Shown piece after piece: positions 19,760-49,204 of a stretch of DNA of 64,000 nt. The stretch comes from Macrostomum lignano (lineage: Eukaryota). The translations under genes were made by a program, and so were the position numbers. Where the stretch lies: the NCBI GenBank assembly GCA_002269645.1, contig NIVC01000110.1:1-64000 (forward strand), written 5' to 3'. Each line of letters starts with the position of its first letter. Position 1 is the stretch's first letter. The notes beneath the pieces are model-generated. The model was not told the origin of the DNA, ran no database searches, and saw only the letters and a list, made by a program, of their open reading frames with translations.

Positions 19760-19767
19760 CTCGCACG

Positions 19768-23647: not shown

Positions 23648-23992
23648 CTAACGGCTTCGAGCTGATTGGGAACGCTGCAATCCTTTCGAAACTTTTCCAC
23701 CCAGGAGCCCTTTTGGCGGCTTTGGTGGCGGCGGCCCGTTTTTAGTGAGTTGATCAACATTGGAATGCGACCGCTTTAATCCCCCAGCCTGCGTGCTCCC
23801 CTGTGGCGACTTTGGCCGTGGCGGCGGCTTCGGCCTCTTGAACGCATTTTGTCGCTTCAATTTATTAGCTAACTTCGGAGTGACTCGGGCCCTCGGAGGC
23901 GGCGGCTTGGGGACCTTGCCCGAGAACGCGCCCCTCATTGCAAAATTGTGAGCAGTGTTTAGAGAAGTTGGTGACAGCTTCAGAAGGGCCAT
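23648..23992 (-). CDS. Pro/Lys-rich peptide family copy A (signal exon deleted; possible pseudogene or intracellular variant)
   Basis: Intact ORF ...MRGAFSGKVPKPPPPR...KRQNAFKRPKPPPRPK.... The acceptor CAG is changed to CAA, and the signal exon present in copy B is absent from the aligned position. Confidence 0.55.
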   Translation of the reverse strand: MALLKLSPTSLNTAHNFAMRGAFSGKVPKPPPPRARVTPKLANKLKRQNAFKRPKPPPRPKSPQGSTQAGGLKRSHSNVDQLTKNGPPPPKPPKGLLGGKVSKGLQRSQSARSR

Positions 23993-25928
23993 ATACTATG
24001 TAATTAAATATTTGCCGAAGAGCTGAAGGCTAGCAAAACGCCTTTGCGAAATCTTCCCCCGCAATCTGCACTCCAAAGCACGCCAATAATTGTACGCTGG
24101 AATGCACTCATGCATACCCTCACAGGGTATTACAGCGGCCATGACTTTCTAAGACTGCTAAGTTTTCAGCTTTTAGTATAGTCCTGCGTTTCTTATAGCT
24201 TTATTGATATTCAAACCCGTAAGAGCTTTTTGCGTATAAAATTGTGTGTTGCTATCTGTATGTGTGTGTTGCTATCTGTTGCGATATGTTGTGGACAATC
24301 TTTGTCTCGCATCAATCTCGTAATTCGTACCTAAACTAAGCTGTCGCACACGTTTAAACCATAGACATGTCAGAATGTTTACGAGCAGCCTTGGACCGTT
24401 TCTGTCAAAGAGGATACGGCAAGTCGACTTTCGAGCTTCCAGAGATTTTTAATCAATACTGCAACTTCGCGTTGAGCTAAAGCACAAAAGCTCAATAAGC
24501 TTGCACCTACGCGCTCGTAGTTCAAATTACCGCGATTCCAAAAAGAAAAGTAGCTACTTTATTTTAATGAAAAAATTACGGCCAAACTTTCTCAATCAAA
24601 TCAATTTCAATGTTTTTTATTTTTTCAATCAAATTAAATGGAATTCAATTCGCTGTTTTTAAGAGTGTTCGGTTCATTTTGATCGGGCCCTTAAAAGTAC
24701 GAGTACATGCATGTGTCGTGTCTGAAACAATCACCATGGCTTGATTCCACATTAAATAGAATCTTGTGCGGGAACACGTTGCCGGTGGGTTGCTGTGTGC
24801 GATTCACTCCATGAGGGCCAACCTCTAAGGTACAGAGTGTACTTCGCCCGACGATTAGATAGTCGTCGACGGCCCTGAGGGTGTGCTGCTGCGCTGCTTT
24901 TCGACTCTACCATCAAATTTAAAATGAATAAAGGAATATGGAACGCAATAAATGATATCAGAGTACATTTTCTCTATTAATTAGTACTGGTTTCTGAACA
25001 TAACAAAAAGTGCGTCATGCAGTCACTTAGCTAAAAGCTTATCTTTTAAAATTTATCAAATCTGATGCAACTTGTGAAATCCACAAATAAGTATGAAACT
25101 TTCTAAAAGACAAATCAGATTACACTCGGAGGGCCAGAGAGGGCCAGAGAGGCGCAACAACGAATCTGATTCTCTTGTGCCCTTGGTTCGATTCCAAGTG
25201 CGGCCGAATTCATTCGGGGTTAAATAGTGCACTTGTTACTAGTGAACTTTGCATGCCATTTGCATTATCGAACCGTTCGTTTTTTACTGAAGTAGTCAAC
25301 AAGTGAAATCATTTTGGCTTTTAGCTTTTTTACGCGACCAAAACGGTCTCAAATTGACGTTGGTTTAAAAAAATTAAAATATTGCGTAGAACGTAATTAA
25401 TTAAAAAATATATTAGTTTGCTACATTTGTTTTAAAATAAACTACTCGGATATCAATATTTGCACCCAACTTGCATCCCTGTCTAGTTTAGTTCCTTATG
25501 GTTCAGTTGTTTATTTTATTTGCTTGCACTCGCAACGAAGTCAAAACCGCGTCAAAAAAACACATTGGATTTACGGGTCGTGTTCGGTCGATTTTTTCAA
25601 AGGGGAAAAAATCTTTGACCCGAAGCCTTTGTCTTTGCTTAGTGTCGATAACTTCATTGAAGCATCCAACGCTTGTTTGCATCGTGAATTCGGGAATAAA
25701 AGTACATATAGTACTGCACAAAAAGTACACCTGGATGTTGTACATTACGATAATCGCAGACTTTTACTTAAAGCCTGATAGGATATAACAATAAGTCTTA
25801 ATAAACTAATGAAAAATAATAAAAAATACTTATTTTTTTGCAAGGGTTTCTGAATATCAATACTGTTACTTGACGTCTCATCAGCTCGACGAAGCCTAGC
25901 TATTAATTTTTTACTTTTGTGGCGATCA

Positions 25929-26472
25929 TCAAAGGGCCTCGAGCCGATTGGGAACGTTACAATGCTTTCGCACCAGCCTGCGTGCTCCCTGTGGCGACTT
26001 TGGCCGTGGCGGCGGCTTCGGCCTCTTGAACGCATTTTGTCGCTTCAATTTATTAGCTAACTTCGGAGTGACTCGGGCCCTCGGAGGCGGCGGCTTGGGG
26101 ACCTTGCCCGAGAACGCGCCCCTCACTGCAAAATTGTGAGCAGTGTTTAGAGAAGTTGGTGACAGCTTCAGAAAGTTCATATATTGAATATTATGTAATC
26201 AAATATCTGCCGAAGAGCTGGGGGCAACCTGGCGAACCGCCTTCAGCGACATCATGGAGGGGAAACTACGTTTCTAGGAAATTTTTATGAGCAAGGGGTC
26301 AGGAAGTTATCTACTGGAAACATCAGTTTCTATCAGATTATTCAAGAACCCCGATAAAATCTAGATCTGTTCTGCACTTACCTCGCCTAGGGCAGGACTC
26401 CACATCACTTGGCAGAGTCAGAGCCACCAGTAGGCACACAGCAAGCAGTATTTGCAGCGTTAACGAAGGCAT
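25929..26472 (-). CDS. Secreted Pro/Lys-rich peptide, copy B (2 exons)
   Basis: Exon 1 26472-26382 (MPSLTLQILLAVCLLVALTLPSDVESCPRR, G|GTAAGT); exon 2 26125-25929 (ttttgcag|TG AGG GGC...). Phase 1. Confidence 0.8.
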
Positions 26473-27937
26473 GTTTGTTGCTATCGGTTGCTTTATGTTG
26501 TGAGTAATCTTTGTCTCGCAGGCAGCTTTCATAAAGCTCAACTAACTCCAACCTCAACTAAGCTGTCGCACACGGTTAAGCCATAGACATATCAGAACAG
26601 CCTACAAGCAGCCTTAGACTGTTTCAGTCAAAGAGAAAGACGGCACGAAAAAGTTCAAGTCGACTTTTAAGCTTCCAGAGATTTTAAATCAATAACTGAA
26701 ACTTCGGGTTGAGCTAAAGTACAACGGCTCAACAAGCTTGCATCTACGCGCAAGTAGTTTAGCTTATCGCAATCCCAATAGAAAATAAAAGTAGCTACTT
26801 TATTTTAATGCAAAAATTACGACCAAAAGCTAGAACAAAATTTGATTTGATGTTTTTACCAGCGTTTAGTTAATTTAAATCGGGCTCATTTAAAGTACAT
26901 GTAGGTGTCATGTCTCGCGACATCACCTGGGTTTGAGTCCGTGTGATGAAGAGGATGATGAAGAGTGGGCTCTTCAGTGAGGTGGCATGAAAACGAATGA
27001 GCCACGGCATGCATCGGTGCTATTTCTTGGAAGCTGGGCTCGACCAGATGAGGAGAATCAAAGCATAGCATTAAGTTCTGCTCTGCAATTAGGTGTCGAA
27101 CAAAATTGAGGCCATGATTTTCGACAAAGGTGCTGACGGTCAGGTGACGGAACTTTCCGTGATTCTTTTACGTCACCTGTATCCTTCCGACCTGCAAGGT
27201 GTGCTGTCTACAACGGTATTCCGGCTGTCCGAGGTGAAACCTGTTTCACCAGATCACGGTGATCGCCGAAGTGATGGTCGAGATCGTCCAGCTGTACATG
27301 GCCGAGATCAAGTTTCGGATAGACTTGCTCAAAAAGACTGCAGACTAGGGGCTCTAGGTTTTTACCACAGACACAAACTCACTGATTACAAGGTAGAGCC
27401 TGTCAAAGTTATGCGAACTTATTAATAGATCGGCCTCCAAATATTGTCGTTTCCCGTAGTCCCTGGCTGCTGCTGATGCTGCAGACGCCCAATCACATGC
27501 GCGCACACTCCGTTGTTTTGTCGTCTACTTACTGGCCGACGCCTTGAAGAAGTTGTTGACGGCTTTGAGAGGCCTGTCGTTGCTCTGATTTTCGACTCTG
27601 AGTCAAATTTTAAATGAATAAATGAATATTGAACGCAAGAAATGATATCAGAGTACTCTGCTCGTATATCAACCAGTACTGTATTCTTTACAAAACAAAA
27701 ATATTGTAGTGCAATATGTATAGTCACTTAGCTATAAGCTCAGCTCTTAAAATTTATCAAATTTGATGCTACTTGTCAAATAAACAATTAGGTATAAAAC
27801 GTTCTAAAAGGCAAATAAGATAAACCGGTGGCACAACAGTGTTGGTCTTGTGCCCGTAGAAACGTTTACAGTCTCATGTCTAGAACTGTGTTTTGAATTT
27901 GGCGAACAAGTACTGAACGCATCCTTTGTCCGTGATG

Positions 27938-28817
27938 CTACCTGGTCTTATCGTTGCTCATCATCTTCACGGCGTCCTGAAAGCCGCTAGCCATTGCTGG
28001 GGGCTTTGGCGCTGAGTTGAAATTTGGCGTCGGGTTCTTGCTGAAAGCATTCTGCTGCTTCATGTTGACAACCTTGACTTTTCCGGCCTCTTTAAGCCTT
28101 TTCAACTGTTGCGCCATTGCTTGCGTTTCATACTTTGTGGCTGGCGGGCTCGGAGGCTTGGGGACTCTCTTTGAGAATGCGCCCTTCACTGCAGGTGTGT
28201 GACGGAGAGACAGGGGTGTGACACATTGAGAATGCGCCCTTCACTGCAGGTGTGTGACGGAGAGACAGGAATGAGACACATTGAGAATGCGCCCTTCACT
28301 ACAGGTGTGTGACGGAGGGACAGGGGTGTGACACATCGAGAATGCGCCCTTCACTGCAGGTGTGTGACGGAGAGACAGGAATGAGACACATTGAGAATGC
28401 GCCCTTCACTGCAGGTGTGTGACGGAGAGACAAGGGTGTGATACATTGATTGAGAATGTGCCCTTCACTGCAGGTGTGTGACGGAGAGACAGGTGTGTGA
28501 CACATTGAGAATGCGCCCTGCACTGTTAGATGTGTGACGGAGGGACAAGGGTGTGGTACATTGATTGAGAATGTGCCCTTAAGTGCAAGGTTTGCGGCTT
28601 TGAAGGTTAAAATAGATTAATAATTTACAAAGAATAAGGGTGTATACACATGCAATAATTTCAGTTTTAATAGAAGCATGAGCTTAAGCATGAGTTTAAG
28701 AAGTCCTTAGACTCAGTTACCTCTCCTAGGGCAGCTGTCGGCATCTCGAGGTAGAATAAAAAACAGAGCAACCAATAGGTAGACGGCGAGCACAGATTGA
28801 ACCGCAACAGAAGGCAT
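27938..28817 (-). CDS. Secreted Pro/Lys-rich peptide, copy C (2 exons)
   Basis: Exon 1 28817-28721 (MPSVAVQSVLAVYLLVALFFILPRDADSCPRR, G|GTAACT); exon 2 28188-27938 (VKGAFSKRVPKPPSPP...KQQNAFSK...). Confidence 0.8.
28173..28590. repeat. 55-60-bp minisatellite (8 units) made of the copy C intron/exon-2 junction
   Basis: Units gagaatgcgcccttcactgcagg... start at 28173, 28228, 28283, 28338, 28393, 28452, 28507 and 28567. Confidence 0.95.
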
Positions 28818-30303: not shown

Positions 30304-30461
30304 CAAGGACTACTCAAGTAGAAGGACAGGAAACTGTGTTTCATGGAAAATTTAGGAGACAGATTTTACCCAAAAAACATTACGGTGATAGGAGACTAGT
30401 AAAACCTGCCCCTAAAATTTCCCAAGAAACGTAGCTTCGTGTCCTACTTGAGTAGTCCTTG
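30304..30461. mobile_element. 158-bp MITE, P-type termini (CAAGG...CCTTG), 8-bp TSD GAGAAAAC
   Basis: TIR CAAGGACTACTCAAGTAG / CTACTTGAGTAGTCCTTG; TSD at 30296-30303 and 30462-30469. Confidence 0.9.
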
Positions 30462-30658
30462 GAGAAAACGAAAGAAAATATTGTTGAAGAATGTCATGAA
30501 TTTAATGAAAACCGATCAATAAACCTGGCATACGTTTGGCTACTGATCTCCATTTGTCGATTTTTTATCTCCTGCAGCGCCTGTTTGCCCATCTGACTTT
30601 GCTCATAGCTGTTTTGGGCACCTCGCCGTCTGATCGTAAGAGATACTCGAAGCTGCTG

Positions 30659-31385
30659 CTACATGGCCGCCCCTGGCGGCAACTTGTTGTTGAGGCGTCC
30701 AGCGAGTCGCGGATTTGCCAGGTGCGAGCCCGCTTCCTCCGGGTTGAACTTCGCCTTTGGCGGCGGCGGCTTCGGAATCCGGTTTGAAAATGCGCCTTTA
30801 ACTGCAAAGGTGGGCGAATGGCAGTTTGAAGATGAAACTGCATTTTGGCAGTAATTTTTTCAAAATATTACTTCCAATCGTCGTGGTAACGTGATGGGTA
30901 GCGCCGTGGTAATACGCCGAAAGGTCGCACCAATGTACCCAGGCTCGATTCCAAGTGCAGTCACATTAATTGGTGGCTAAATTGGAATCTCGGCTTTGCT
31001 CTGCAGCTCGTGCGATTACCGCCCTCGAGGGCCAACCCCCAAGTCACAGTAAAGTGTACATGCCTAACGATGTGTACATGCTTGTGTGCCTGCTCAGAGG
31101 AGTCGGCGGAATGGGCAATAATGCCTCTCGCCGGTTGTGTGACAATGTCGCTTAAAGTGCGCCAGGGTGCACACAACCCCTGCCTATAGCTAAAAATGAT
31201 GTACTCTCGGAGTCAGTACTGTATAAATTAATTATATACTTTAAAAAATACGAGCTAAGAAATTTTCAAATGAATTGATTCTCCTCACCTCGTCTAGGAC
31301 AACCCTCCGCCTCGTTTGACAGGGTTAAAGTCAGAGCTATCAGAAAGTAAGTCGCCAGTATCGATCGAAGCAAAATTGGCGGCAT
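30659..31385 (-). CDS. Secreted Pro/Lys-rich peptide, copy D (2 exons; stop probably premature)
   Basis: Exon 1 31385-31289 (MPPILLRSILATYFLIALTLTLSNEAEGCPRR, G|GTGAGG); exon 2 from 30801 (VKGAFSNRIPKPPPP...AAM*). The TAG falls where copy C reads AM-A-QQL. Confidence 0.7.
30890..31190 (+). mobile_element. tRNA-derived SINE, copy 3 (in the intron of peptide D, antisense)
   Basis: A-box-like agcgccgtggt and B-box-like GGCTCGATTCC; the body matches copies 1 and 2. Confidence 0.8.
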
Positions 31386-31417
31386 TTTTGTTATAATCTT
31401 CTTGCTGTTGTTTAGTA

Positions 31418-32162
31418 TAGCATTTTGCAGCCCATTTGGGCTTACGCGCATTTAATTTAATCCAAGATACGTTTGCCAATGTAACAGAGCTTTTGTCTAT
31501 GGTAGCAAGGCTGGCACAGCGGCATTTAATTTGGTCCAAAAAGCATCCATTTGGTCCAAACACTCGTGAGCCATTGGACACTCTTGCCTTCTATCAACCG
31601 TCTGCAGGTTGTTGCGCACCGCTGGAATGTCAGCGTCTCTACCAGCAATTTTCAGTTGCTTTTCCAGAGCTCTGCTGATAGTCAAAATCTGATAACCAAC
31701 TGGAGCTGTTCCCTCAACTTCTGCTGCATTTTCTGAAACGTCAACAAAGGGTTCGTCTCCACTGCATCGAGTAGCAGTTGGACCTGAGGCTCTCGAGCAA
31801 CTTTCCTTGGCGATTGCCACCCTTTCGCAGGCAATCTCTGTCGGCAGAGTTTCAAGGCGCTGCTGGATGCTGTAAACCACCTTTTCTTTTACATTCAGCA
31901 ACCTTGCAATGTCCTTTGGGTGTTTACCTCCGTCTAGTGCTTCGATCACAAGCCAATGACATCCGTTCAACAGCCTAGCATATGGTCCACAATTCTGGGA
32001 CTGAGCTGCAAATGAACTAAATGGACCAAATTGATGCTTGTTGGACCAAATTAAATGCCGCTGTGCCAGCCTTGCTACCATAGACAAAAGCTCCATTACT
32101 TTGACAAACATATCTTGGATTAAATTCAATGCGCGTAAGCCCAAATGGGCTGCAAAAAGCTA
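31418..32162 (-). mobile_element. Internally deleted Tc1/mariner-type element (about 145-bp TIRs, TA TSD)
   Basis: Inverted repeats at 31418-~31560 and ~32020-32162; TA at 31416-17 and 32163-64; HTH-like remnant DGGKHPKDIARLLNVKEKVVYSI on the minus strand. Confidence 0.85.
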
Positions 32163-33643
32163 TATTGACCAGCTTGTCTATTGCAACCTACATGTGGTTA
32201 ATGGCAGGAGAGTAAATTCAGAGAGTAATGATTTTTTAACCATAGATTGTCACTTTTTCCGTAATAAATCCAAAGTATTTTTAGTTTAAAAAGTCCTTGA
32301 ATAAAAAAAATCGATGTACTTTTTAAGCAGAAAAAGCTAACAAAGGGCTTGATTGTAAGACAGGAAGGTACCAAAGGCTGAAAATTTTTTTAAAGCAGAA
32401 AGAAAAAGTAAAAAATTGAATGACAAGACTCGTAAGTCGTCACGTTTAAGTCAGTTTAGTCTATTTTCCCTATTTGTGATGCATTCTCTCGTCCTTTTTA
32501 CTTTCCCATCAGCTAATGTACAGTCTGGTAAGTTTGTTTCCCTGTCCGCTTCCTTCCAGTCCCTGTTCAGTCCCTGTCTGGCTCTCTGCCCAGCCATTGT
32601 CTGTGTTCTCTCAAGGTTCCGACATGTGTTACTTTACATATAGGCATTACTTGTATTCCCAAATGAGAAATAAATTCAACGATATGATGTAACCGCCCTT
32701 GTCGCCTGTCCGCTCCGTTGAGAGACGAACGCGTGACCAGAGGGGGCAATGACCGTAGGCTGCCTATGACCGGGCAATGACCTGACTGACCTCCAGCACC
32801 AGACTGTCCCGCCCATATGATTGATAGCTTTGGTAGCGCTTTCGTGACTAGAGGGCCAAGGACCCACATGGACCCTACCTGTAGCCAAGGTGTAATAGTT
32901 GGTCACTCGGTCATGGTGTGACCGAGTGGCTGCCACCACTCTATGTGACCTGGCGCACCTGGATCTTACTACCAGACCTCTCGAGGCTAGAGCCCCGCCT
33001 GGATTGGTTACCAGCAGGAGATTTAGGCTAACAGGGGAGACACATGCAGCCTAGTACAGGGACTCTGCTTGGGGCATGATCAGGAACTCTGGGCTCAATC
33101 TGGAGGATTTCTCAGCAGGGGATCCTTTGTGGCTGTGAGCGAGGCTGACTTGCGGCTCTAATTACTAAGAGTAGTGTGAGGCGAACATGTACTGTCTCTA
33201 GTTTAGATTGCTCAGGGCGAAGGGACGCGTTAGCATGGGGTTGCAACCTTCCTGCTGCCATTCTGTGCTAAGACTCGCTAATTCCCTCTACTGCACGCAC
33301 TCACGGCCCCGCAGCACGAACTCACAGGCGGGCTTTGCACGGGGAGAGGCCATTAGCTTACCCAACTTCCTTTTGCTTTGCCACCCCGGGAGAAAGGCTT
33401 AGCAAGCCATGAGTGAAATGATGGTGAAAGATTGAATAATGATGAGGTTAGTTAATAGTTAATAATTAGGCCCTTAGGCAAATAATCAGGTAATTAGGCG
33501 GCTTCACTATTGAGTAAAAGTACAGCAAAAGGTACGGTATCACAATTGGCTCAGCTCTCTAATCAAGCAATGGGCAATAGGCAACCCCCGGATAAGCAAG
33601 GGCAATTAGTGCACAAATTAGTAATAGGAACTCACCGGCAGCT

Positions 33644-33646
<3 letters not shown>

Positions 33647-33685
<39 letters not shown>
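33647..33685. repeat. (GA)n microsatellite
   Basis: Direct observation. Confidence 0.97.
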
Positions 33686-33687
<2 letters not shown>

Positions 33688-38002: not shown

Positions 38003-39255
38003 ATGATTGGAAAAAAATTAATAGTCACGTGGTCGCTGTTTGTGCTGATGCTGTCTACCATTCACAGCTCCGAGGGTTGCTTTTCGAGATTTAACGGTAA
38101 GTTGAACATCGACTGGGCCTTATATAAACATGCTATAATTTTTGCTAAAATACTGATAGCTATTCAGAACCGAGCTGAAACACGCCAATGCTTTACCCTC
38201 CCCACCCTACCTCGTGACCCGTTATATAAATCAATAATATAGCTTCCAGATGCCAAAATGAGTGTCTGTGGTGCCTAAATGAGTGTCTGTGGTGCCAAAA
38301 TGAGTGTCTGTGGTGCCAAAGTGTCTGTGGTGCCAAAGTGTCTGTGGCGCCAAAATGAGTGTCTGTGGTGCCAAAGTGTCTGTGGCGCCAAAATGAGTGT
38401 CTGTGGCGCCAAAATGAGTGTCTGTGCGCCAAAATGAGTGTCTGTGGTGCCAAAATGAGTGTCTGTGGCGCCAAAATGAGTGTCTGTGTTGCCAAAATGA
38501 GTGTATGTAGCGCCAAAATGAGTGTATGTAGCGCCAAAATGAGTGTATGTAGCGCCAAAATGAGTGTATGTAGCGCCAAAATGAGTGTATGTAGCGCCAA
38601 AATGAGTGTATGTAGCGCCAAAATGAGTGTATGTAGCGCCAAAATGAGTGTCTGTGGTGCCAAAATGAGTGTCTGTGGTGCCAAAATGAGTGTCTGTGGT
38701 GCCAAAATGAGTGTCTGTGGTGCCAAAATGAGTGTCTGTGGTGCCAAAATGAGTGTCTGTGGCGCCAAAATGAGTGTCTGTGGCGCCAAAATGTCTGTGG
38801 CGCCAAAATGAGTGACGTCTATGGCGCCAAAATGAGTGCGTAACTCCTAGTGCTAACAACACCTATTCCCAAAATATAGAACGAATTTTATTTAATCATG
38901 TAGAATTCTTGGTTTTGTTGCCCCACCATAAAAACTATGGCGATACCCCTGAACTGAAGTAGTCAGTTTTATTAACAATACGCCGGTTCAAAAGGTGGTT
39001 CTAATAAATATTTTAAATAAATAAATGCGCAATTTTGAATTCTTTTCAGTCGGCAAAACTCAAGCCAGCCCGGCTTTGCGCGCCTTCGTTGCGCAGTTGC
39101 GAAATGCACTCGGCATCAAGGATGACGGATCAGTTGGTGGTGATGTCGGCATATCTCAGACGGATATCGACAACTACAGGCGGATGTACAAGAACCAGAC
39201 TGCTAGGGCTGTTGCGGATTCAGATGGCAACGCCAACACAAAGTACATTGCTTAA
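38003..39255 (+). CDS. Small secreted protein E (2 exons, Cys at predicted +1)
   Basis: Exon 1 38003-38096 (MIGKKLIVTWSLFVLMLSTIHSSEGCFSRFN, G|GTAAGT); exon 2 39050-39255 (ttttcag|TC GGC: VGKTQASPALRAFVAQLRNALG...KYIA*). Phase 1. Confidence 0.75.
38250..38840. repeat. 21-bp minisatellite (GCGCCAAAATGAGTGTCTGTG)n in the intron of gene E
   Basis: Period of 21, with 18-bp variants. Confidence 0.97.
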
Positions 39256-40265
39256 TGTCCCCTTTACCACCCGCATTCAGTAGTATCAAAAGAAGTTTTT
39301 TATCTGCTGTGATTTTGAATTTCCTATTTATTTTAACGCCACTTCCACGCTCGTAAATTTTTGTTACAATCCTCTTAATTCGTATTAACATTTATTGCTT
39401 AAATTAATAAGTCCAGTCTTGTCTTGTTAAGCAACCATAAATTTCCCTACCATTGCGCGTGATAGCTATGACACGACTACCATCAGGTTCCCACCAGATA
39501 AGCAATTACTCACAGTCACAGCAGATTGTTAAAATATTGAATATGTATGGGAGACAGTAATAAATGTCACAAATAGTTCACCTAAGTTATCTGCTTCAAT
39601 GCAGACTCGGACTGCCGACCTTTGCTTAGCCTACGAGTACAAAACGCAGCTAATAGTCACGGGGTAGTCAACAAAACTAAAGCAAAGTGCGTCTACGGTG
39701 CTCAAATTTTAATGCTCAACGTACATTTAATTTTAAAGCTATACATGCACCTGCATTTGCAGGAATATTCTACTTCTTAGAGTACACAGGCCTATAGCTA
39801 CGCTCGTAGTCCAAATAGATCAAAGTTCAGTGCTTTTTCAACCCGTCATGTCTCACTAAGCAGTCTGAGTTCGTTTGTGTTTGTTTCTTAGTAGAGGTAT
39901 TGAGTTGGCTAACCATTGCCAGCGGATTCAGAGTAGCTGGTGGTGCTTCATGTCTTGTACAAAACGCATCACTTGTGTAATTGTTAACTTTACATATGGT
40001 TAACATATGGTTAACTTTAACTGAGGCTGATATTGACTGGCTGAGAAACTGATTATGTCATAAACTGTTTCGTGTGAGTGTTTAATTATATAACTGCTAC
40101 AATTCATTCTATTAATTCAATGAGAGCTAGCCTAGATGTGAACAGATTGGAGTGCTTCTGCAGTGGCCAGGGTTCGAATCTTTGTAGTGTAAACTTTTTT
40201 ATTAAAAGTTATAAATAAAAGATTTAAATCATGCGATTTAAAAAATATTGTACTCGATGACAAAA

Positions 40266-42588
40266 CCATTACTGCACTAGATGTGAAATCTATAATTGCA
40301 CTAGATGTGAAATCTATAATTGCACTAGATGAGAAAACAAAGATTGCACTAGATTAGACAACTATTACTGCACTAGATGAGAAAACTATTATTGCACTAT
40401 ACTAGACATCTATTACTGCACTGGGTGAGAAAACAAAGATTGCACTAGATTAGACAACTATTACTGCACTAGATGAGAAAACTATTATTGCACTAGATGA
40501 GAAAACTATTATTGCACTAGATGAGAAAACAATTATTGCACTAGATTAGACATCTATTATTGCACTAGATGAGAAAACAATTATTGAACTAGATGAGAAA
40601 ACTATTATTGCACTAGATGAGAAAACAATTATTGCACTAGATGAGAAAACAATTATTGCACTAGATGAGAAAACAATCATTGCAATAGATGAGAAAGCAA
40701 TTATTGCACTAGATTAGACATCTATTATTGCACTAGATGAGAAAACAATTATTGCACTAGATGAGAAAACAATTATTGCACGAGATGAGAAAACAATTAT
40801 TGCACTAGATGAGAAAACAATTATTGCACTAGATGAGAAAACAATTATTGAAATAGATGAGAAAACAATTATTGCACTAGATGAGAAAACAATTATTGCA
40901 CTAGATTAGAAAATAGTTATTGCACAAGATGAGAAAACAATTATTGCACTAGATGAGAAAACAGTTATTGCACAATATTAGAAAACAGTTATTGCACGAG
41001 ATGAGAAAACAATTATTGCACTAGATGAGAAAACAATTATTGCACTAGATTAGACATCTATTATTGCACTTGATGAGAAAACAATTATTGCACTAGATTA
41101 GACAACTATTATTGCATTAGATGAAAAAACTGTTATTGCACAAGATGAGAAAACAATTATTGCACTAGATTAGACATCTATTATTGCACTAGATGAGAAA
41201 ACAATTATTGCACTAGATGAGAAAACAATTATTGCACTAGATTAGACAACTATTACTGCACTAGATGAGAAAACTATTATTGCACTATACTAGATATCTA
41301 TTACTGCACTGGATGAGAAAACAATTACTGCACTAGATGAGAAAACAATTATTGCACTAGATTAGACAACTATTAACTGCACTAGATTAGACAACTATTA
41401 CTGCACTAGATGAGAAAACTATTATTGCACAAGATGAGAAAACTATTATTGCACAAGATGAGAAAACTATTATTGCACTAGATTAGACATCTATTATTGC
41501 ACTAGATGAGAAAACAATTATTGCACTAGATGAGAAAACAATTATTGCACTAGATTAGACAACTATTACTGCACTAGATTAGACAACTATTACTGCACTA
41601 GATGAGAAAACTATTATTGCACAAGATGAGAAAACTATTATTGCACTAGATTAGACATCTATTATTGCACTAGATGAGAAAACAAATATTGCACTAGATG
41701 AGAAAACAATTATTGCACTAGATGAGAAAACAATTATTGAAATAGATGAGAAAACAATTATTGCACTAGATGAGAAAACAATTATTGCACTAGATTAGAA
41801 AATAGTTATTGCACAAGATGAGAAAACAATTATTGCACTAGATGAGAAAACAATTATTGCACTAGATTAGACAACTATTATTGCATTAGATGAAAAAACT
41901 GTTATTGCACAAGATGAGAAAACAATTATTGCACTAGATGAGAAAACTATTATTGCACTAGATTAGACATCTATTATTGCACTGGATGAGAAAACAATTA
42001 TTGCACTAGATGAGAAAACAATTATTGCACTAGATTAGACAACTATTACTGCACTAGATGAGAAAACTATTATTGCACTATACTAGACATCTATTACTGC
42101 ACTGGATGAGAAAACAATTATTGCACTAGATGAGAAAACAATTATTGCACTAGATTAGACAACTATTAACTGCACTAGATTAGACAACTATTACTGCACT
42201 TGATGAGAAAACTATTATTGCACAAGATGAGAAAACTATTATTGCACTAGATTAGACATCTATTATTGCACTAGATGAGAAAACTATTATTGCACTAGAT
42301 GAGAAAACAATTATTGCACTAGATTAGACATCTATTATTGCACTGGATGAGAAAACAATTATTGCACTAGATGAGAAAACAATTATTGCACTAGATGAGA
42401 AAACAATTATTGCACTAGATGAGAAAACAATTATTGCACTAGATGAGAAAACAATCATTGCAATAGATGAGAAAGCAATTATTGCACTAGATTAGACATC
42501 TATTATTGCACTAGATGAGAAAACAATTATTGCACTAGATGAGAAAACAATCATTGCACTAGATGAGAAAACAATTATTGCACTAGAG
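40266..42588. repeat. 24-bp satellite (CTAGATGAGAAAACAATTATTGCA)n with interspersed variant monomers
   Basis: Period of 24; second monomer type CTAGATTAGACATCTATTATTGCA; variant blocks recur (e.g. about 40850 and about 41740). Confidence 0.98.
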
Positions 42589-43060
42589 CTTTAGCATTTT
42601 AGCAAGGCAGCAACAGCCGACAACTGGGATAGGGAATCAGATGATCTGATGGATGCTGTGCGATGCACTAGGACGGCATACCGGAAAACAGCTATATAAT
42701 TGACCATGCGTCTGCTTTATGCACATAGTCCCTGCCCCCACCAGTTGCAAGTTTTTAGTTGGTAGCTTTTTAGGCTATTTCTGAACTTTTTAAGCTCCTT
42801 TAAAGCAAATCCAAATTCAGGTTTAGCTGAACTCAAATTTAAATCTGGCGTCTGTGTGCACATCAGGTAATATTAGACTTTCTCTCTGGCGATTTAGACT
42901 CATGAGAGTCAGTCCTAAGGCACTCACGAGCGAATCGTATCATATGTATATACACTGCCTAATAATACAACAAATAAGCCACAAACGTAACGCCTTTATT
43001 TGTTTGAAATTGCCTACAGCAAACAAACCTGTGGCACTTTTTCAGATTGAATACCTGCTC

Positions 43061-44764
43061 ATGGCGAAAAAGTTAGCGGAGACAATCGCCTCCAGCTCGG
43101 CTCACGGCATCAGTCGAGCAGCTGCCTCGGAGAACAAACTGCTTCGAGTGATGTGGATTCTGCTATTCCTCATTTGCCTGGCCGTTTTTCTGAAAAGCGG
43201 CATCAACCTTGTGCTCAAACTGCAAAAGAGCGAGATGACAAAGAAATACCAATTGGATCAGGCAACTTTCGTGCTCCCAGATCTGTACTTTTGTCCCATC
43301 AACCCGTACTCGGGCAGCTATCCCTTCACACTGACAAAGGAAGAGGCTGATTTGGTAAACAGCCGCATCAAACAGCTGATTGACCGCTTCGGAGAACTGT
43401 ATGATGTTCCGAAAAGCATTTTATTTCATGCCTTCTTGTGGACGCCTCAAGTGCAGTTGTCGCTTCCATTTGATCTGCTGGCAAAGTATTTGCTGGTTCG
43501 AAAGGAGGAATCAGTTCAATTCGCGGCCATCACCGATGATTTTGTAGCGCATAATGTTGATGTGGAAGCGTTTTACAACTACGAGAATCTAGTTTGCTTT
43601 CGGCTGATTCTCAGTGACAAACTAAAAAAGATGATCATGAATCCAGGTAGCACGCTGAAGTTGCGACTGTCAACTGACCCTTACTTGGCTGAGCTCAACT
43701 TCACTGGGCATCCGATTCAGCCCATTGCTGACAGCAATGGAAATTCGGTTCCGTTTCTTGAGTGGCACCCATACCGCTATTATGAACAGTTGAGAACATC
43801 CGGCTTTACTATGCTGATTGTGCCACCAGGAGCTTATCCGTCGCTAAGGTTCGAGGAGAGCTTCCACATGTCTCCAGGCTTTGAGTACTCGGTTCAGCTC
43901 AAGATGACAGAAAGCACCTGCAGTGAGGAGCTGCACGATAAGTTCTGCCTGTTGGAAACTCCGCCAGTCGAGTTCATGAACTCGCTATCAGGCAAGCGGG
44001 AACGATTCAACTACAGCAATGCTGCCTGCTACTATAGAAATGTTAACGTACAGGTAGTTGACGAGATTGGATGTCAGCTGAGTCAGCGGCCGTCGCTTTG
44101 GGAATTTCGCGACTATCCGCACTGCAGCAACATGTCTGAGATGACAGCAGCTACTGTCAAAAGAATGAGAAAAGCTGGCTCTGGACGACGAATCGAGCTT
44201 GAGACTCTTACCCAAAAGTACTGCAAAACTAGAATCCCCTGCTCGTATCCGATTTACTCCACCAGTTACTCGTTTGGCAAGTGGCCAAGCGCCGGCAGTT
44301 CGATTTTAAGGTACTTCGCCGAATACTTCAACCGCACCTCTGTAAGCAAGGCTGAGGCGCCAGCTTTGGCTAGGGTGTCCGATATTGCAAAGCAGCTTCA
44401 AATGGGTGACCACTCAGCCCACCTGGAGGGCATCTTCCACTCCTACGTGTCCGAGTCGATGCTTAGTGTCCAAATTACTATCGACTCGCTTCTCTCGCCA
44501 CAAGTCATGCTAGCCTGGTCTTACACATTCGCTGACCTTCTGGCTGACACCGGAGGTTTGCTGGGTCTGTACATCGGCTGCAGCGTGCTCACCGTTTGCG
44601 AAATGTTCGAACTCATCTACATCTGCGTGTCCCTGCTGCTCAAGCGTAGGTCGGCCAAGAGAAGCAGCTCAAGGACCGGCGATCAAGAGACTGCAGGATG
44701 CGATGTCGGAGAAAAACAAGCGCTGGGTGGAGAAAATGCTGAGGAAATCGAACTTAGGAGCTGA
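43061..44764 (+). CDS. DEG/ENaC family sodium channel subunit (intronless CDS)
   Basis: N-terminal SSAHGI (HG motif), TM1 VMWILLFLICLAVF, Cys-rich thumb, TM2 DLLADTGGLLGLYIGCSVLTVCE (GxS filter). The ATG at 43061 follows an acceptor ttttcag at 43045. Confidence 0.95.
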   Translation: MAKKLAETIASSSAHGISRAAASENKLLRVMWILLFLICLAVFLKSGINLVLKLQKSEMTKKYQLDQATFVLPDLYFCPINPYSGSYPFTLTKEEADLVNSRIKQLIDRFGELYDVPKSILFHAFLWTPQVQLSLPFDLLAKYLLVRKEESVQFAAITDDFVAHNVDVEAFYNYENLVCFRLILSDKLKKMIMNPGSTLKLRLSTDPYLAELNFTGHPIQPIADSNGNSVPFLEWHPYRYYEQLRTSGFTMLIVPPGAYPSLRFEESFHMSPGFEYSVQLKMTESTCSEELHDKFCLLETPPVEFMNSLSGKRERFNYSNAACYYRNVNVQVVDEIGCQLSQRPSLWEFRDYPHCSNMSEMTAATVKRMRKAGSGRRIELETLTQKYCKTRIPCSYPIYSTSYSFGKWPSAGSSILRYFAEYFNRTSVSKAEAPALARVSDIAKQLQMGDHSAHLEGIFHSYVSESMLSVQITIDSLLSPQVMLAWSYTFADLLADTGGLLGLYIGCSVLTVCEMFELIYICVSLLLKRRSAKRSSSRTGDQETAGCDVGEKQALGGENAEEIELRS

Positions 44765-45469
44765 TGGGGATGGCGAATATCGACTACAGAACGACGAATG
44801 ACTCTCAAATATGATTGGTTTGCACTGGCTTCTTCTGAACAGCCTGACCATGTCAGGTTGGGCAATCTTGCTTATTCATATATAGACTACGAGCCGTATT
44901 TGTTGATCAAGTTGGAAGACAAAACTCGTCATAAGCTTTAATAACCATTACGATTATTGTGCATTGACGTCAAACTTTATATTAAATGTATTACAATACG
45001 TTGAGTGTAAGTCTACACTTAATTGAACTTTTATTTTACTGATTATGTCTAGCTTTAGTTACACGCTCCTAAACTATAATCATCCAGACCAGTTTCTGGC
45101 TTCTCCTCGTAAAAAGCGACCAAACATAATCTCTATTCTTTAATGTTGCAATTTTATATTGATATAAACTATTGACAGACTGTTGAATAGAACTGACTCT
45201 GTCTCCCTGGAACCATACCACTTTATGATTGATCCGGTGTTTTGGGTTAGAACGGGCAGAAACTAGCCATCAATTATGCTTGCACAGTGCTTATCTGAGC
45301 CTATCTAATACACTCTGGGACAGCTCTGAAACTGCAGGAAACGTAGAATCTGCTGACTTTTATTCAATTTGCCCCGATAGACAGGCACTGGATAGGAATT
45401 AAATGCAAAACTCTAGTGGCGATGGAAGCATCATATTTATGGCGCCATAGTAGAGTGGCGCTATAATAG

Positions 45470-47706
45470 GATTACAGTGGTGCTAGTAGGGTTGCAGTAG
45501 TGCTAGTAGGGTTACAGTGTACGAGTAGGGTTGCAGTAGTGCTAGTAGGGTTACAGTAGTGCTAGTAGGGTTGCAGTAGTGCTAGTAGGGTTGCAGTAGT
45601 GCTAGTAGGGTTGCAGTAGTGCTAGTAGGGTTGCAGTAGTGCTAGTAGGGTTGCAGTAGTGCTAGTAGGGTTGCAGTAGTGCTAGTAGGGTTACAGTAGT
45701 GCTAGTAGGGTTGCAGTAGTGCTAGTAGGGTTACAGTAGTGCTAGTAGGGTTGCAGTAGTGCTAGTAGGGTTACAGTAGTGCTAGTAGGGTTGCAGTAGT
45801 GCTAGTAGGGTTGCAGTAGTGCTAGTAGGGTTGCAGTGTGCTAGTAGGGTTGCAGTAGTGCTAGTAGGGTTGCAGTGTGCTAGTAGGGTTACAGTAGTGC
45901 TAGTAGGGTTGCAGTAGTGCTAGTAGGGTTACAGTAGTGCTAGTAGGGTTGCAGTAGTGCTAGTAGGGTTGCAGTAGTGCTAGTAGGGTTGCAGTGTGCT
46001 AGTAGGGTTGCAGTAGTGCTAGTAGGGTTGCAGTGTGCTAGTAGGGTTACAGTAGTGCTAGTAGGGTTACAGTAATGCTAGTAGGGTTGCAGTAGTGCTA
46101 GTAGGGTTACAGTAGTGCTAGTAGGGTTACAGTAGTGCTAGTAGGGTTGCAGTAGTGCTAGTAGGGTTACAGTAGTGCTAGTAGGGTTGCAGTAGTGCTA
46201 GTAGGGTTGCAGTGTGCTAGTAGGGTTACAGTAGTGCTAGTAGGGTTACAGTAGTGCTAGTAGGGTTACAGTAGTGCTAGTAGGGTTGCAGTAGTGCTAG
46301 TAGGGTTGCAGTAGTGCTAGTAGGGTTGCAGTAGTGCTAGTAGGGTTACAGTAGTGCTAGTAGGGTTACAGTGTACTAGTAGGGTTGCAGTGTGCTAGTA
46401 GGGTTGCAATAGTGCTAGTAGGGTTGCAGTGTGCTAGTAGGGTTGCAGTAGTGCTAGTAGGGTTACAGTGTACTAGTAGGGTTGCAGTGTGCTAGTAGGG
46501 TTGCAATAGTGCTAGTAGGGTTGCAGTGTGCTAGTAGGGTTGCAGTAGTGCTAGTAGGGTTACAGTGTACTAGTAGGGTTGCAGTAGTGCTAGTAGGGTT
46601 ACAGTGTACTAGTAGGGTTGCAGTAGTGCTAGTAGGGTTGCAATAGTGCTAGTAGGGTTGCAGTAGTGCTAGTAGGGTTGCAGTAGTGCTAGTAGGGTTA
46701 CAGTGTACTAGTAGGGTTGCAGTAGTGCTAGTAGGGTTGCAATAGTGCTAGTAGGGTTACAGTGTACTAGTAGGGTTACAGTGTACGAGTAGGGTTGCAG
46801 TAGTGCTAGTAGGGTTACAGTGTACGAGTAGGGTTGCAGTAGTGCTAGTAGGGTTGCAGTAGTGCTAGTAGGGTTACAGTGTACGAGTAGGGTTGCAGTA
46901 GTGCTAGTAGGGTTGCAGTGTGATAGTAGGGTTGCAGTGTGATAGTAGGGTTGCAGTAGTGCTAGTAGGGTTGCAGTGTGCTAGTAGGGTTACAGTAGTG
47001 CTAGTAGGGTTGCAGTAGTGCTAGTAGGGTTGCAGTAGTGCTAGTAGGGTTACAGTAGTGCTAGTAGGGTTACAGTAGTGCTAGTAGGGTTACAGTGTAC
47101 TAGTAGGGTTGCAGTAGTGCTAGTAGGGTTGCAATAGTGCTAGTAGGGTTACAGTGTACTAGTAGGGTTACAGTAGTGCTAGTAGGGTTACAGTAGTGCT
47201 AGTAGGGTTGCAGTAGTGCTAGTAGGGTTGCAGTAGTGCTAGTAGGGTTACAGTAGTGCTAGTAGGGTTACAGTAGTGCTAGTAGGGTTACAGTGTACTA
47301 GTAGGGTTACAGTGTACTAGTAGGGTTGCAGTAGTGCTAGTAGGGTTGCAATAGTGCTAGTAGGGTTACAGTGTACTAGTAGGGTTACAGTGTACGAGTA
47401 GGGTTGCAGTAGTGCTAGTAGGGTTACAGTGTACGAGTAGGGTTGCAGTAGTGCTAGTAGGGTTGCAGTAGTGCTAGTAGGGTTACAGTGTACGAGTAGG
47501 GTTGCAGTAGTGCTAGTAGGGTTGCAGTAGTGCTAGTAGGGTTACAGTAGTGCTAGTAGGGTTACAGTAGTGCTAGTAGGGTTACAGTAGTGCTAGTAGG
47601 GTTGCAGTAGTGCTAGTAGGGTTACAGTAGTGCTAGTAGGGTTGCAGTAGTGCTAGTAGGGTTGCAGTAGTGCTAGTAGGGTTACAGTAGTGCTAGTAGG
47701 GTTACA
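45470..47706. repeat. 20-bp satellite (GTAGTGCTAGTAGGGTTRCA)n with 19-bp variants
   Basis: Direct periodicity; core TAGGGTT. Confidence 0.98.
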
Positions 47707-48063
47707 GCCTGGTTCCCTGGCTGCAGCACTGAGCTGCGGAAAGGGAACTAGAGATAAGCTACACATTGAACTGTCAATTTTGGGCGTCTAGTTTTGCAAG
47801 GCTCAGAAATATGTTCATTAATCATAAAATTATTTGATTTTTTAATAATTAGAGAACATTCGCAATATAGAATTCGAACTTATGCTCAAAGATTCCTATG
47901 GCTGTCTATGGGAAATCTTGCAATGAGGCACCTTGCCGTATCTGCTTTCAAAGCTTATAAAAGCGTGTTTCAAGACGCATTAAATGAATAAAATTAGTAA
48001 TGCTTTTAGTAGTAGCTACAGTACCTCTAAGCTGCATTAGTGTTAACTATAAACACCGAAGTA

Positions 48064-49204
48064 ATGCAGATTGGCCAGATCGTTCTGTCGCTTGCAACAC
48101 TGCTGGTTTTGGCACTGTTAATCGAGACCGGAGACACTTGTGCTTATGGTAAGCATTTTTGACCAAAATTTTCTCTTATACGCGCTGCTTTAGCACCAGG
48201 GGCTTTAGCACCAGGGGCTTTAGCACCAGGGGCTTTAGCACCAGGGGCTTTAGCACCAGGGGCTTTAGCACCAGGGGCTTTAGCACCAGGGGCTTTAGCA
48301 CCAGGGGCTTTAGCACCAGGGGCTTTAGCACCAGGGGCTTTAGCACCAGGGGCTTTAGCACCAGGGGCTTTAGCACCAGGGGCTTTAGCACCAGGGGCTT
48401 TAGCACCAGGGGCTTTAGCACCAGGGGCTTTAGCACCAGGGGCTTTAGCACCAGGGGCTTTAGCACCAGGGGCTTTAGCACCAGGGGCTTTAGCACCAGG
48501 GGCTTTAGCACCAGGGGCTTTAGCACCAGGGGCTTTAGCACCAGGGGCTTTAGCACCAGGGGCGCCAGCACCAGGGGCTTTAGCACCAGGGGCTTTAGCA
48601 CCAGGGGCTTTAGCACCAGGGGCTTTAGCACCAGGGGCTTTAGCACCAGGGGCTTTAGCACCAGGGGCTTTAGCACCAGGGGCGCCAGCACCAGGGGCGC
48701 CAGCACCAGGGGCGCCAGCACTAGGGGCGCCAGCACCAGGGGCGCCAGCACCAGAGGCGCCAGCACCAGGCGCACCAGCACCAGAGGCACTATGCAGCGC
48801 CAGGGGCGCCAGCACCAGGCGCACCAGCACCAGAGGCGCCAGCACCAGAGGCGCCAGCACCAGGGGCACTATGCAGCGCCAGAGGCTTTAGCAATAGGGC
48901 TTTTAGTACCAGAGGCGCCAGCAACAGGCGCCCAGTTTATTAACTTTAAGAGACCCACATTCTTAATCCCATATGAAAGCTTTTTGTAGCTTAACAACTG
49001 AAATTTATTTATTAACTTTCAGTTGCCCGGACCACCACCAAGCCTTTAGTTGACCGCGCCGTGGCAAAAATACAAGAGAAAATCGGGAGCATTAGCAGAG
49101 ACTCAAAAAGGCCGGAACCAACAGGTAATACTTCCCCGAGTAGTCCGAATGTCAATAGGGAGAGCTCGGAGTTAAATAAACACATGAACATTTCTGCTCC
49201 ATGA
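48064..49204 (+). CDS. Small secreted protein F (2 exons, Cys at predicted +1)
   Basis: Exon 1 48064-48148 (MQIGQIVLSLATLLVLALLIETGDTCAY, G|GTAAGC); exon 2 49023-49204 (actttcag|TT GCC: VARTTTKPLVDRAVAKIQEKIG...SAP*). Phase 1. Confidence 0.75.
48186..48935. repeat. 15-bp minisatellite (GGCTTTAGCACCAGG)n in the intron of gene F
   Basis: Period of 15; homogeneous at left, diverged at right. Confidence 0.98.

What the first reader, a model, noticed from the sequence alone, without database searches (positions are those of the whole stretch)
23648..49204. Family or convergent class of two-exon secreted peptides with an invariant Cys at +1 (candidate lipidated peptides)
Seen: five genes share one architecture: signal peptide, then small-acidic-small|Cys, then 2-5 residues, a phase-1 intron and Val at the junction. 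The sites are VES|CPRR-V (26472), ADS|CPRR-V (28817), AEG|CPRR-V (31385), SEG|CFSRFN-V (38003) and GDT|CAY-V (48064). Each spliced product has only this Cys (copy B has one more in its frameshifted tail). Mature parts of B-D are cationic and Pro-rich; E and F are unrelated in sequence. Established: signal peptidase needs small residues at -3 and -1, and HHAT/Rasp palmitoylates an N-terminal Cys exposed by signal cleavage with nearby basic residues (Hedgehog CGPGR, Drosophila Spitz). Inference: an undescribed set of secreted N-palmitoylated or disulfide-dimerising peptides (antimicrobial, mucus/rhabdite, seminal or signalling) built by reusing a signal+Cys exon module.
Basis: partly seen in the sequence, partly recalled or inferred. 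Interest (0 to 1): 0.8.

Follow-up and report, generated by a model that had tools for sequence, protein, structure and literature searches.

The report
Orphan flatworm secreted peptides starting with cysteine
A small cluster of flatworm-only (Macrostomum lignano) genes encodes short secreted peptides that probably begin with a cysteine. The genes are real, but the proposed lipid attachment is untested, and most of the shared gene layout is the ordinary layout of secreted-protein genes.

Summary
The window is the first 64 kb of Macrostomum lignano contig NIVC01000110.1. The sequence observation holds. B, C and D are tandem two-exon paralogues, already annotated in GenBank from RNA-seq-guided models as hypothetical proteins. 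A is a decayed fourth copy. E is a separately annotated orphan with the same layout. F is unannotated but very unlikely to be a chance ORF.

Exhaustive profile search found no relatives of B-D outside M. lignano. Between paralogues, the ten residues after the predicted signal cleavage site (CPRRV[K/R]GAFS, spanning the intron) show 15 synonymous and 2 non-synonymous codon differences. The signal peptide and the tail change freely. This conserved head is the functional part.

E and F have no detectable sequence homology to B-D. The phase-1 intron next to the cleavage site, and Val from a G|T junction, are known generic features of secreted-protein genes.

All five N-termini fit the published sequence rules for Hedgehog acyltransferase. 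However, cleavage is only rule-predicted, and most proteins with Cys at +1 are not known substrates. I favour small cationic secreted peptides whose single N-terminal Cys forms disulfide dimers or tethers. Lipidation remains a permitted minority reading. Interest is moderate to low.

The parts
23648..23938 (-). Copy A: decayed paralogue consisting of exon 2 only. The acceptor AG is mutated to AA, which creates an ATG, giving the ORF MRGAFSGKVPKPPPP... (96 aa) with no signal peptide. The exon 1 region has been replaced.
   Evidence: Sequence, translation. Homology of A to B stops at B's ATG. Not annotated.
25929..26472 (-). Gene B (Mlig006408g1): exon 1 26472..26382 (signal peptide + CPRR), phase-1 intron 26381..26126, exon 2 26125..25929. 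Cys codon 26394..26392. 95 aa from the conserved ATG. The annotated form extends to about 26529-26532.
27938..28817 (-). Gene C (Mlig027608g1): exon 1 28817..28721, intron 28720..28189, exon 2 28188..27938. Cys codon 28733..28731. 115 aa. The annotated form starts at the upstream ATG at 28853.
28171..28564 (-). 55-nt tandem array inside intron C. It carries six decoy copies of the 3' splice site plus the first 18 nt of exon 2.
30659..31385 (-). Gene D (Mlig013154g1): exon 1 31385..31289, intron 31288..30802, exon 2 30801..30659. Cys codon 31301..31299. 79 aa. The annotated partial form extends to 31448.
31409..32171 (.). Foldback element (150-nt inverted arms 31409-31558 and 32022-32171) directly upstream of D. 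It contains D's annotated 5' extension and D's upstream ATG.
38003..39255 (+). Gene E (Mlig031605g1): exon 1 38003..38096 (signal + CFSRFN), phase-1 intron 38097..39049 (holds a 21-nt minisatellite), exon 2 39050..39255. Cys codon 38078..38080. 99 aa.
48064..49204 (+). Candidate gene F (unannotated): exon 1 48064..48148 (signal + CAY), phase-1 intron 48149..49022 (holds a 15-nt minisatellite), exon 2 49023..49204. Cys codon 48139..48141. 88 aa.
   Evidence: TATAAAAG and TCTATGG lie upstream.
26581..26587 (-). TCTATGG motif, 81-200 nt upstream of the ATG. It also occurs at 24359 (A), 28898 (C), 31496 (D, inverted, inside the foldback arm), 35048 (734-aa gene), 37894 (E) and 47905 (F). Candidate promoter-proximal element.

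Best explanation
B, C and D (plus the decayed copy A) are a tandem, Macrostomum-restricted orphan family. E, and probably F, are neighbouring orphan genes of the same general type.

Each gene has two exons. Exon 1 encodes an ER signal peptide plus the first 3-6 mature residues. A phase-1 intron follows. Exon 2 encodes the rest of the peptide.

Signal peptidase is predicted to cut after small-acidic-small, directly before the Cys. For B-D this releases 51-87-residue, strongly basic, Pro-rich, presumably disordered peptides.

The invariant head of B-D, CPRRV[K/R]GAFS..[V/I]PKPPxPP, is the functional part. The tail is nearly free to vary, and is even frameshift-polymorphic in B.

Shown:
- gene structure and RNA-based annotation;
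- restriction to M. lignano;
- the selection pattern across the protein;
- composition.

Inferred:
- cleavage before Cys;
- secretion;
- that the single unpaired N-terminal thiol forms a covalent link in the oxidising secretory pathway. I think an intermolecular disulfide (homo- or heterodimers, or tethering to a secreted matrix or mucus) is the most likely link. N-palmitoylation is a permitted alternative.

The signal-exon, phase-1-intron and Val layout shared with E and F is the generic architecture of secreted-protein genes. It is not evidence of a special module.
For: - Identity of the window and gene models.
- The annotation is built from RNA-seq (StringTie/TACO): PMC5730564.
- UniProt names the long form of B 'Secreted protein'.
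- No relatives among 1.84 billion representative proteins or 5.8 billion clusters. No Pfam family.
- Codon comparison of B, C and D: CPRRVKGAFS 15 synonymous / 2 non-synonymous; signal peptide 21/42; following tail 1/18.
- Composition: pI 10.7-12, 10-21 K+R, 10-14 Pro, one Cys.
- Excess over shuffled sequence.
- Generic phase-1 intron rule: PMC1626468.
Against: - No SignalP-type predictor was available.
- The true start codon and the transcription start site are unresolved. In-frame upstream ATGs exist in B, C and D.
- No expression site, peptide mass or redox state is known.
- A disulfide role is a default expectation for a lone Cys in a secreted peptide (my knowledge), not a result.
- Three of three small secreted-type lineages in 25 kb have [small][D/E][G/S/T]|Cys. 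That is more than a base rate of about 3% would predict, so calling the E/F resemblance generic may undersell a real shared feature.
Confidence: 0.5

Rival explanations
1. One reading: after signal cleavage the N-terminal Cys is N-palmitoylated by the HHAT/Rasp orthologue in the ER. This would make membrane-tethered or short-range lipopeptides.
For: Published recognition rules are met (PMC8061759; bioRxiv 10.64898/2026.08.27.744591):
- a free N-terminal Cys;
- residue 2 may be G/S/A/P/Q but not K (B-D have P, F has A);
- a basic residue within the first 7 (B-D R3, R4, K/R6; E R4; F R6);
- the first six residues suffice for Shh.

The Cys-led decapeptide is the most constrained part of B-D.
Against: [quoted passage not shown] 87 human proteins have a predicted N-terminal Cys, and none but the Hedgehogs is a shown substrate.
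- There is no similarity to the Hedgehog N-terminus beyond composition.
- Residue 2 of E is Phe, which is untested, and E lacks a basic residue 4-6 positions after the Cys.
- The HHAT orthologue in M. lignano was not checked.
- Cleavage is only predicted.
Confidence: 0.13
2. Prohormone-like precursors. The invariant Arg-Arg is a convertase site, the tetrapeptide CPRR is discarded, and the active products start at V[K/R]GAFS. In C this would be the hexapeptide VKGAFS, flanked by RR and KR.
For: RR is invariant in B, C and D. In C the block VKGAFS is followed by KR, and in B by GK, a possible amidation signal.
Against: - The second basic site is not conserved (GK / KR / NR).
- Cys-Pro upstream of RR is as conserved as the rest.
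- There are no repeated peptide copies and no G-KR/RR amidation motif shared by the paralogues.
- The downstream PKPPxPP is also conserved.
Confidence: 0.1
3. Coincidence plus ascertainment. Only B-D are a meaningful unit. E is an unrelated orphan and F may not be a gene. The Cys at +1 in E and F results from choosing, among several allowed cleavage sites, the one next to Cys.
For: - E and F each have three rule-allowed cleavage sites.
- No significant similarity of E or F to B-D.
- F is absent from the protein collections and from the annotation.
- The intron phase and Val are generic.
Against: - Signal-like ORFs with Cys at an allowed +1 and a close donor are expected 0.01 times per shuffled window, against 4 seen.
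- All three lineages share an acidic residue at -2.
- E and F carry the same TCTATGG upstream motif as B and C, and F has a TATAAAAG box.
Confidence: 0.25
4. The hydrophobic N-termini are uncleaved signal anchors, especially if the upstream ATGs are used. This would give tiny type II membrane peptides with a juxtamembrane luminal Cys.
For: The hydrophobic cores are long for signal peptides in C and F (about 18-19 residues). In-frame upstream ATGs add 12-22 residues in B, C and D.
Against: - A helix-breaking or polar c-region with good -3/-1 residues follows every core.
- The upstream extensions are unconserved in sequence and length. D's extension lies in a foldback-element arm.
- UniProt calls the long form of B 'Secreted protein'.
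Confidence: 0.05

Closest known systems
HHAT/Rasp substrates (Hedgehog CGPGR..., Drosophila Spitz/Keren/Gurken)
   Same: A signal peptide predicted to expose an N-terminal Cys. A permitted residue at position 2 (Pro/Ala). A basic residue within the first seven residues. A short N-terminal motif is the conserved part.
   Different: No homology to Hedgehog or EGF ligands. No folded signalling domain. Tiny disordered basic peptides. Acylation is untested. Most Cys+1 proteins are not known substrates.
Linear cationic, proline-rich secreted peptide families of invertebrates (e.g. mussel myticalins, PMC5577615; insect and mammalian PrAMPs, from my knowledge)
   Same: Taxonomically restricted multigene family. 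Signal peptide followed by a short, strongly basic, Pro-rich, probably unstructured peptide. Tandem copies with fast-changing sequence.
   Different: In B-D the N-terminal head is conserved and the rest is variable. There is a single N-terminal Cys. No anionic propiece. No activity data. No sequence similarity.
Single-cystine dimeric peptides (e.g. tunicate halocidin and dicynthaurin; from my knowledge, not checked here)
   Same: A short secreted cationic peptide with exactly one Cys, the expected substrate for an intermolecular disulfide.
   Different: No homology. Dimerisation is not shown. Here the Cys is at the very N-terminus.
Generic signal-peptide exon with a phase-1 intron (Tordai & Patthy 2004; Nielsen & Wernersson 2006, PMC1626468)
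   Same: A phase-1 intron within a few codons of the signal cleavage site, at a G|G/T proto-splice-like junction.
   Different: Nothing distinctive. This part of the finding is ordinary.
Lineage-specific small secreted proteins of M. lignano, such as prostate-limited seminal-fluid candidates (PMC5977470)
   Same: Short, signal-bearing, without homologues outside the genus.
   Different: The four gene IDs were not found in the supplementary files held for that paper or two others. The tissue of expression is unknown.

Membership tests
HHAT/Rasp (Hedgehog acyltransferase) substrates | ER signal peptide whose cleavage leaves a free N-terminal Cys | tested here: inconclusive
   The (-3,-1) rule places an allowed site before Cys in all five. 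It is the unique site in C and the only site shared by B, C and D, but it is one of three in E and in F. No trained predictor and no protein data.
HHAT/Rasp (Hedgehog acyltransferase) substrates | Residue 2 tolerated (G/S/A/P/Q, not K) and a basic residue within the first seven residues | tested here: met
   Rules from PMC8061759. B-D are C-P-R-R-V-K/R and F is C-A-Y-V-A-R. E is C-F-S-R, where Phe at position 2 has not been tested in the literature I read.
HHAT/Rasp (Hedgehog acyltransferase) substrates | Amide-linked palmitate on the N-terminal Cys, dependent on HHAT | not testable with these tools
   Needs labelling or mass spectrometry.
HHAT/Rasp (Hedgehog acyltransferase) substrates | An HHAT orthologue present and co-expressed in the organism | not tested
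The HHAT/GUP1 family is reported in all eukaryotic lineages examined, but M. lignano was not checked.
Hedgehog N-terminal signalling peptide | Sequence similarity to CGPGRGFGKRRHPKK... | tested here: not met
   Local alignment against 2000 shuffles gave z of 1.4 or less and p of 0.1 or more for all five.
One homologous family comprising B-F (shared signal+Cys exon) | Detectable sequence homology of E and F to B-D | tested here: not met
   hhalign probability 0.6-0.7%. Mature parts z below 3. The only notable score, D-E signal peptides at z 7.6, rests mainly on 'EGC'. B, C and D are clearly homologous to one another (z 18-24).
Neuropeptide/prohormone precursors | Conserved peptide(s) flanked by conserved di- or monobasic sites, often with an amidation Gly | tested here: inconclusive
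   RR is invariant, but the downstream site varies (GK/KR/NR). There is no shared G-basic motif and no repeats.
Proline-rich cationic antimicrobial peptides | Small secreted peptide, high net positive charge, high Pro content | tested here: met
   B: 21 K+R against 1 D+E, 14 Pro in 69 aa. C: 18 against 4, 11 Pro in 87 aa. D: 10 against 2, 10 Pro in 51 aa. This is composition only. There is no homology and no activity data, so membership is not claimed.

The most novel reading that the evidence does not exclude
B-D, and possibly E and F, are lineage-specific secreted lipopeptides whose conserved Cys-Pro-Arg-Arg head is an HHAT/Rasp recognition motif. They would be the first HHAT substrates outside the Hedgehog and EGF-ligand families, in an animal where RNAi and transgenesis can test the idea.
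Probability: 0.12. Interest if true: 0.75.

Novelty: new member of a known kind. Interest (0 to 1): 0.33.

Why it matters
If the Cys-led head were an acylation or dimerisation signal, this cluster would be a compact, genetically tractable case of how a new secreted-peptide family acquires a post-translational handle. It would also widen the very short list of HHAT substrates.

As it stands, the finding documents three things:
- an uncharacterised orphan peptide family in a regeneration model;
- a clear target for experiments, the decapeptide CPRRV[K/R]GAFS;
- a candidate promoter motif.

Most of the architecture that drew attention is the normal layout of secreted-protein genes.

Tried and rejected
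- Homologues. A profile of A-D against 5.8 billion clusters and a profile of the annotated B-D proteins against 1.84 billion representatives with full HMMER returned only the M. lignano genes themselves. E returned only itself. F returned nothing. Pfam returned nothing.
- Mimicry of the Hedgehog N-terminus. Rejected: no similarity beyond composition.
- E/F as diverged members of the B-D family. Not supported by BLOSUM/shuffle or hhalign tests.
- Expression data. The IDs Mlig006408, Mlig027608, Mlig013154 and Mlig031605 do not occur in the searchable full texts, nor in the held supplements of PMC5816591, PMC7336406 and PMC5977470.
- Transcript contigs for the spliced proteins. Look-ups of the annotated proteins returned genome contigs only.
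- Second-haplotype comparison for Ka/Ks. The contigs are 98.8-100% identical over the genes, too close to be informative.
- Poly(A) signals downstream of the stops. No consistent pattern.
- Copy A as an annotated gene. Not on record.
Full report
**Source of the window**

An exact-protein look-up of the 734-aa ORF at 35248-37452 places the window on Macrostomum lignano assembly GCA_002269645.1, contig NIVC01000110.1, with window coordinates equal to record coordinates. The fetched locus is base-for-base identical to the window.

The surrounding sequence is ordinary animal genome:
- FN3/phosphatase-like exons;
- a DIRS-like and a LINE-like retroelement;
- an ASC/ENaC channel gene (43061-44764);
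- dihydroorotate-dehydrogenase-like exons;
- many minisatellites.

**Check of the observation**

| Gene | Strand | Exon 1 | Exon 2 | Length (aa) |
|---|---|---|---|---|
| B | - | 26472..26382 | 26125..25929 | 95 |
| C | - | 28817..28721 | 28188..27938 | 115 |
| D | - | 31385..31289 | 30801..30659 | 79 |
| E | + | 38003..38096 | 39050..39255 | 99 |
| F | + | 48064..48148 | 49023..49204 | 88 |

- All introns are G|GT...AG|T and phase 1, so the split codon is Val.
- Copy A (23648-23938) has exon 2 only. Its acceptor AG is mutated to AA, which creates an ATG and an ORF MRGAFSGKV... without a signal peptide. Its exon 1 region is replaced by unrelated sequence, and it is not annotated.
- Mature B-D are very basic (pI 10.7-12) and Pro-rich.
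- Each mature peptide has one Cys, except B, whose tail is frameshifted relative to A and to the other haplotype.

**Are they genes?**

B, C, D and E are GenBank genes annotated as hypothetical proteins:

| Gene | GenBank ID |
|---|---|
| B | Mlig006408g1 |
| C | Mlig027608g1 |
| D | Mlig013154g1 |
| E | Mlig031605g1 |

- Their products contain exactly the junctions CPRR-V[K/R]GAFS and CFSRFN-V.
- The GenBank annotation was made from a genome-guided RNA-seq assembly (StringTie/TACO plus trans-splicing and poly(A) data; PMC5730564). The splicing therefore has indirect RNA support.
- UniProt names the long form of B 'Secreted protein'.
- A second contig (NIVC01003469.1, locus L002) carries D, C, B and A at 98.8% identity over 13.5 kb. 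It is a second haplotype or a very recent duplicate.
- F is absent from the protein collections and from the annotation. At 88 aa it may simply be below an ORF-length cut-off, but that is my inference.

**Start codons**

- The annotators extended B, C and D to in-frame upstream ATGs or to a 5'-partial start, adding 12-22 residues.
- These extensions share no sequence or length.
- The MP[S/P] start and a purine at -3 are conserved in all three.
- D's extension lies inside a 150-nt arm of a foldback element.
- I therefore take the conserved ATG as the likely start. The transcription start sites are not resolved here.

**More than chance?**

A simple signal-peptide heuristic was applied to every ATG on both strands. 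It required a short non-acidic n-region, an uncharged hydrophobic core, and then a (-3,-1)-allowed site.

| Measure | Window | Mean in 200 block-wise Markov shuffles |
|---|---|---|
| Signal-like ATG ORFs | 11 | 7.9 |
| With Cys at an allowed +1 | 5 | 0.42 (maximum 3) |
| With a GTRAG donor within nine codons | 4 | 0.01 |

- A six-frame scan for hydrophobic core + [small][D/E][G/S/T/A]C found only these five plus one non-signal hit.
- Even F is therefore unlikely to be a random ORF.
- The thresholds were set after seeing the data, so these are rough figures.

**Independence of the five genes**

- B, C and D are clear paralogues (shuffle z 18-24).
- E and F are not detectably related to them or to each other. 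Mature parts give z below 3, and hhalign probability is below 1%.
- The best alignments do fall in register on the c-region and Cys. D and E share ...EGC.
- All three lineages have an acidic residue at -2.
- The evidence therefore counts three lineages, not five. It cannot distinguish very old common ancestry from convergence.

**Where the constraint lies**

A codon-by-codon comparison of B, C and D gives the following pairwise differences.

| Region | Synonymous | Non-synonymous |
|---|---|---|
| Signal peptide | 21 | 42 |
| CPRRVKGAFS | 15 | 2 (K/R only) |
| xx[V/I]PKPPxPP | 9 | 7 |
| Next seven residues | 1 | 18 |

- The ten residues starting at the Cys, which span the intron, are under strong purifying selection at the protein level.
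- The tail drifts. In B it differs by a frameshift between haplotypes.
- This is the most informative result. Whatever these peptides do, the Cys-led head does it.

**Cleavage**

- E has three allowed sites (IHS|S, SEG|C, CFS|R) and F has three (IET|G, GDT|C, TCA|Y).
- 'Invariant Cys at +1' is therefore well founded for B-D and only plausible for E and F.

**The generic parts**

An excess of phase-1 introns around signal-peptide cleavage sites is long known. It is attributed to G|G proto-splice sites or to exon shuffling (PMC1626468, citing Tordai & Patthy 2004). Val at the junction is simply G|T. For B-D it is one inherited event. For E and F it is roughly a one-in-four event each (my estimate).

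**The lipidation idea**

The HHAT review (PMC8061759) states the following:
- The first six mature residues of Shh suffice for palmitoylation.
- An N-terminal Cys is needed.
- Residue 2 can be G, S, A, P or Q, but not K.
- A basic residue must lie within the first seven residues.

A 2026 preprint puts the basic residue 4-6 positions after the Cys.

B-D (C-P-R-R-V-K/R) and F (C-A-Y-V-A-R) fit both formulations. E (C-F-S-R-F-N-V) fits only the looser one.

The same review stresses two cautions:
- An N-terminal Cys alone is not sufficient.
- None of the 87 human proteins with a predicted N-terminal Cys, apart from the Hedgehogs, is a shown substrate.

I tested whether the B-D head resembles the Hedgehog N-terminus. 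It does not, beyond composition. Lipidation is thus permitted by sequence but has a low prior.

**Best reading**

- This is a Macrostomum-restricted tandem family (B-D, with relic A) of small, secreted, disordered cationic peptides.
- Their conserved N-terminal head begins with the only Cys.
- It sits next to two further orphan small-peptide genes of the same generic layout.
- For the Cys I favour an intermolecular disulfide (dimers or tethering). That is the usual fate of a lone Cys in the secretory pathway (my knowledge).
- N-palmitoylation (about 0.13) and convertase processing at RR (about 0.1) are alternatives.
- Tissue and function (antimicrobial, mucus or adhesive, seminal, signalling) remain open. 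I found no expression data for these IDs.

**Novelty and score**

The genes are already annotated as hypothetical proteins, but the family is undescribed and has no homologues. It is a new member of a known kind: taxonomically restricted small secreted cationic peptides. The lipidation reading would be notable if true, but it rests only on a short permissive motif. Interest 0.33.

Noticed in passing
window 24359, 26581, 28898, 31496, 35048, 37894, 47905 (also 16308, 21011 and others): The 7-mer TCTATGG/CCATAGA occurs 18 times against 6.6 expected. It lies 81-200 nt upstream of the ATG of A, B, C, D, the 734-aa gene, E and F, but not the ASC channel gene. An AT-rich TATA-like element usually follows 16-50 nt downstream (F has TATAAAAG near 47953). 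This is a candidate promoter-proximal motif of M. lignano. D's copy lies in a foldback-element arm.
   Followed up: partly
window 28171-28564 (intron of gene C): A 55-nt tandem array carries six extra copies of the 3' splice site plus the first 18 nt of exon 2. One copy has TAG instead of CAG. Use of most decoys would keep CPRRVKGAFS (two have a changed residue) and then give short Cys-rich tails.
   Followed up: partly
window 38252-38838, 48187-48867, 45467-47707, 40246-42587: Long minisatellites (21, 15, 20 and 24-nt units) fill the introns of E and F and the intergenic DNA around the ASC gene. Several keep long spurious ORFs open.
   Followed up: no
window 16577-20886 vs L002 17745-17967: A DIRS-like retroelement (reverse transcriptase/RNase H plus a tyrosine-recombinase-like ORF and a gag-like ORF) is present in the window but absent from the otherwise 99% identical second contig. 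This is an insertion polymorphism.
   Followed up: partly
window 31409-32171: A foldback element with 150-nt inverted arms (92% complementary), 24 nt upstream of gene D's ATG. It encloses most of a 215-aa ORF (31497-32144) containing a segment that looks to me like a helix-turn-helix (by eye, not tested). D's annotated 5' extension is encoded in one arm.
   Followed up: partly
window 23648-23938: In copy A the mutated acceptor (AG to AA) creates an ATG in frame with exon 2. A signal-less 96-aa ORF, MRGAFSGKVPKPPPP..., with the longest intact tail of the family, remains open. It is identical in the second haplotype.
   Followed up: partly
window 39050-39055 (gene E, residue 33): The GenBank protein for E has Ser33 where the genome sequence encodes Gly33 (GGC). 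I could not explain this by any alternative splice. It may be a transcript-derived allele.
   Followed up: partly
window 35248-37452: A 734-aa single-exon annotated gene between D and E has no Pfam domain. By exact look-up it was found only on this contig. It is another orphan.
   Followed up: no
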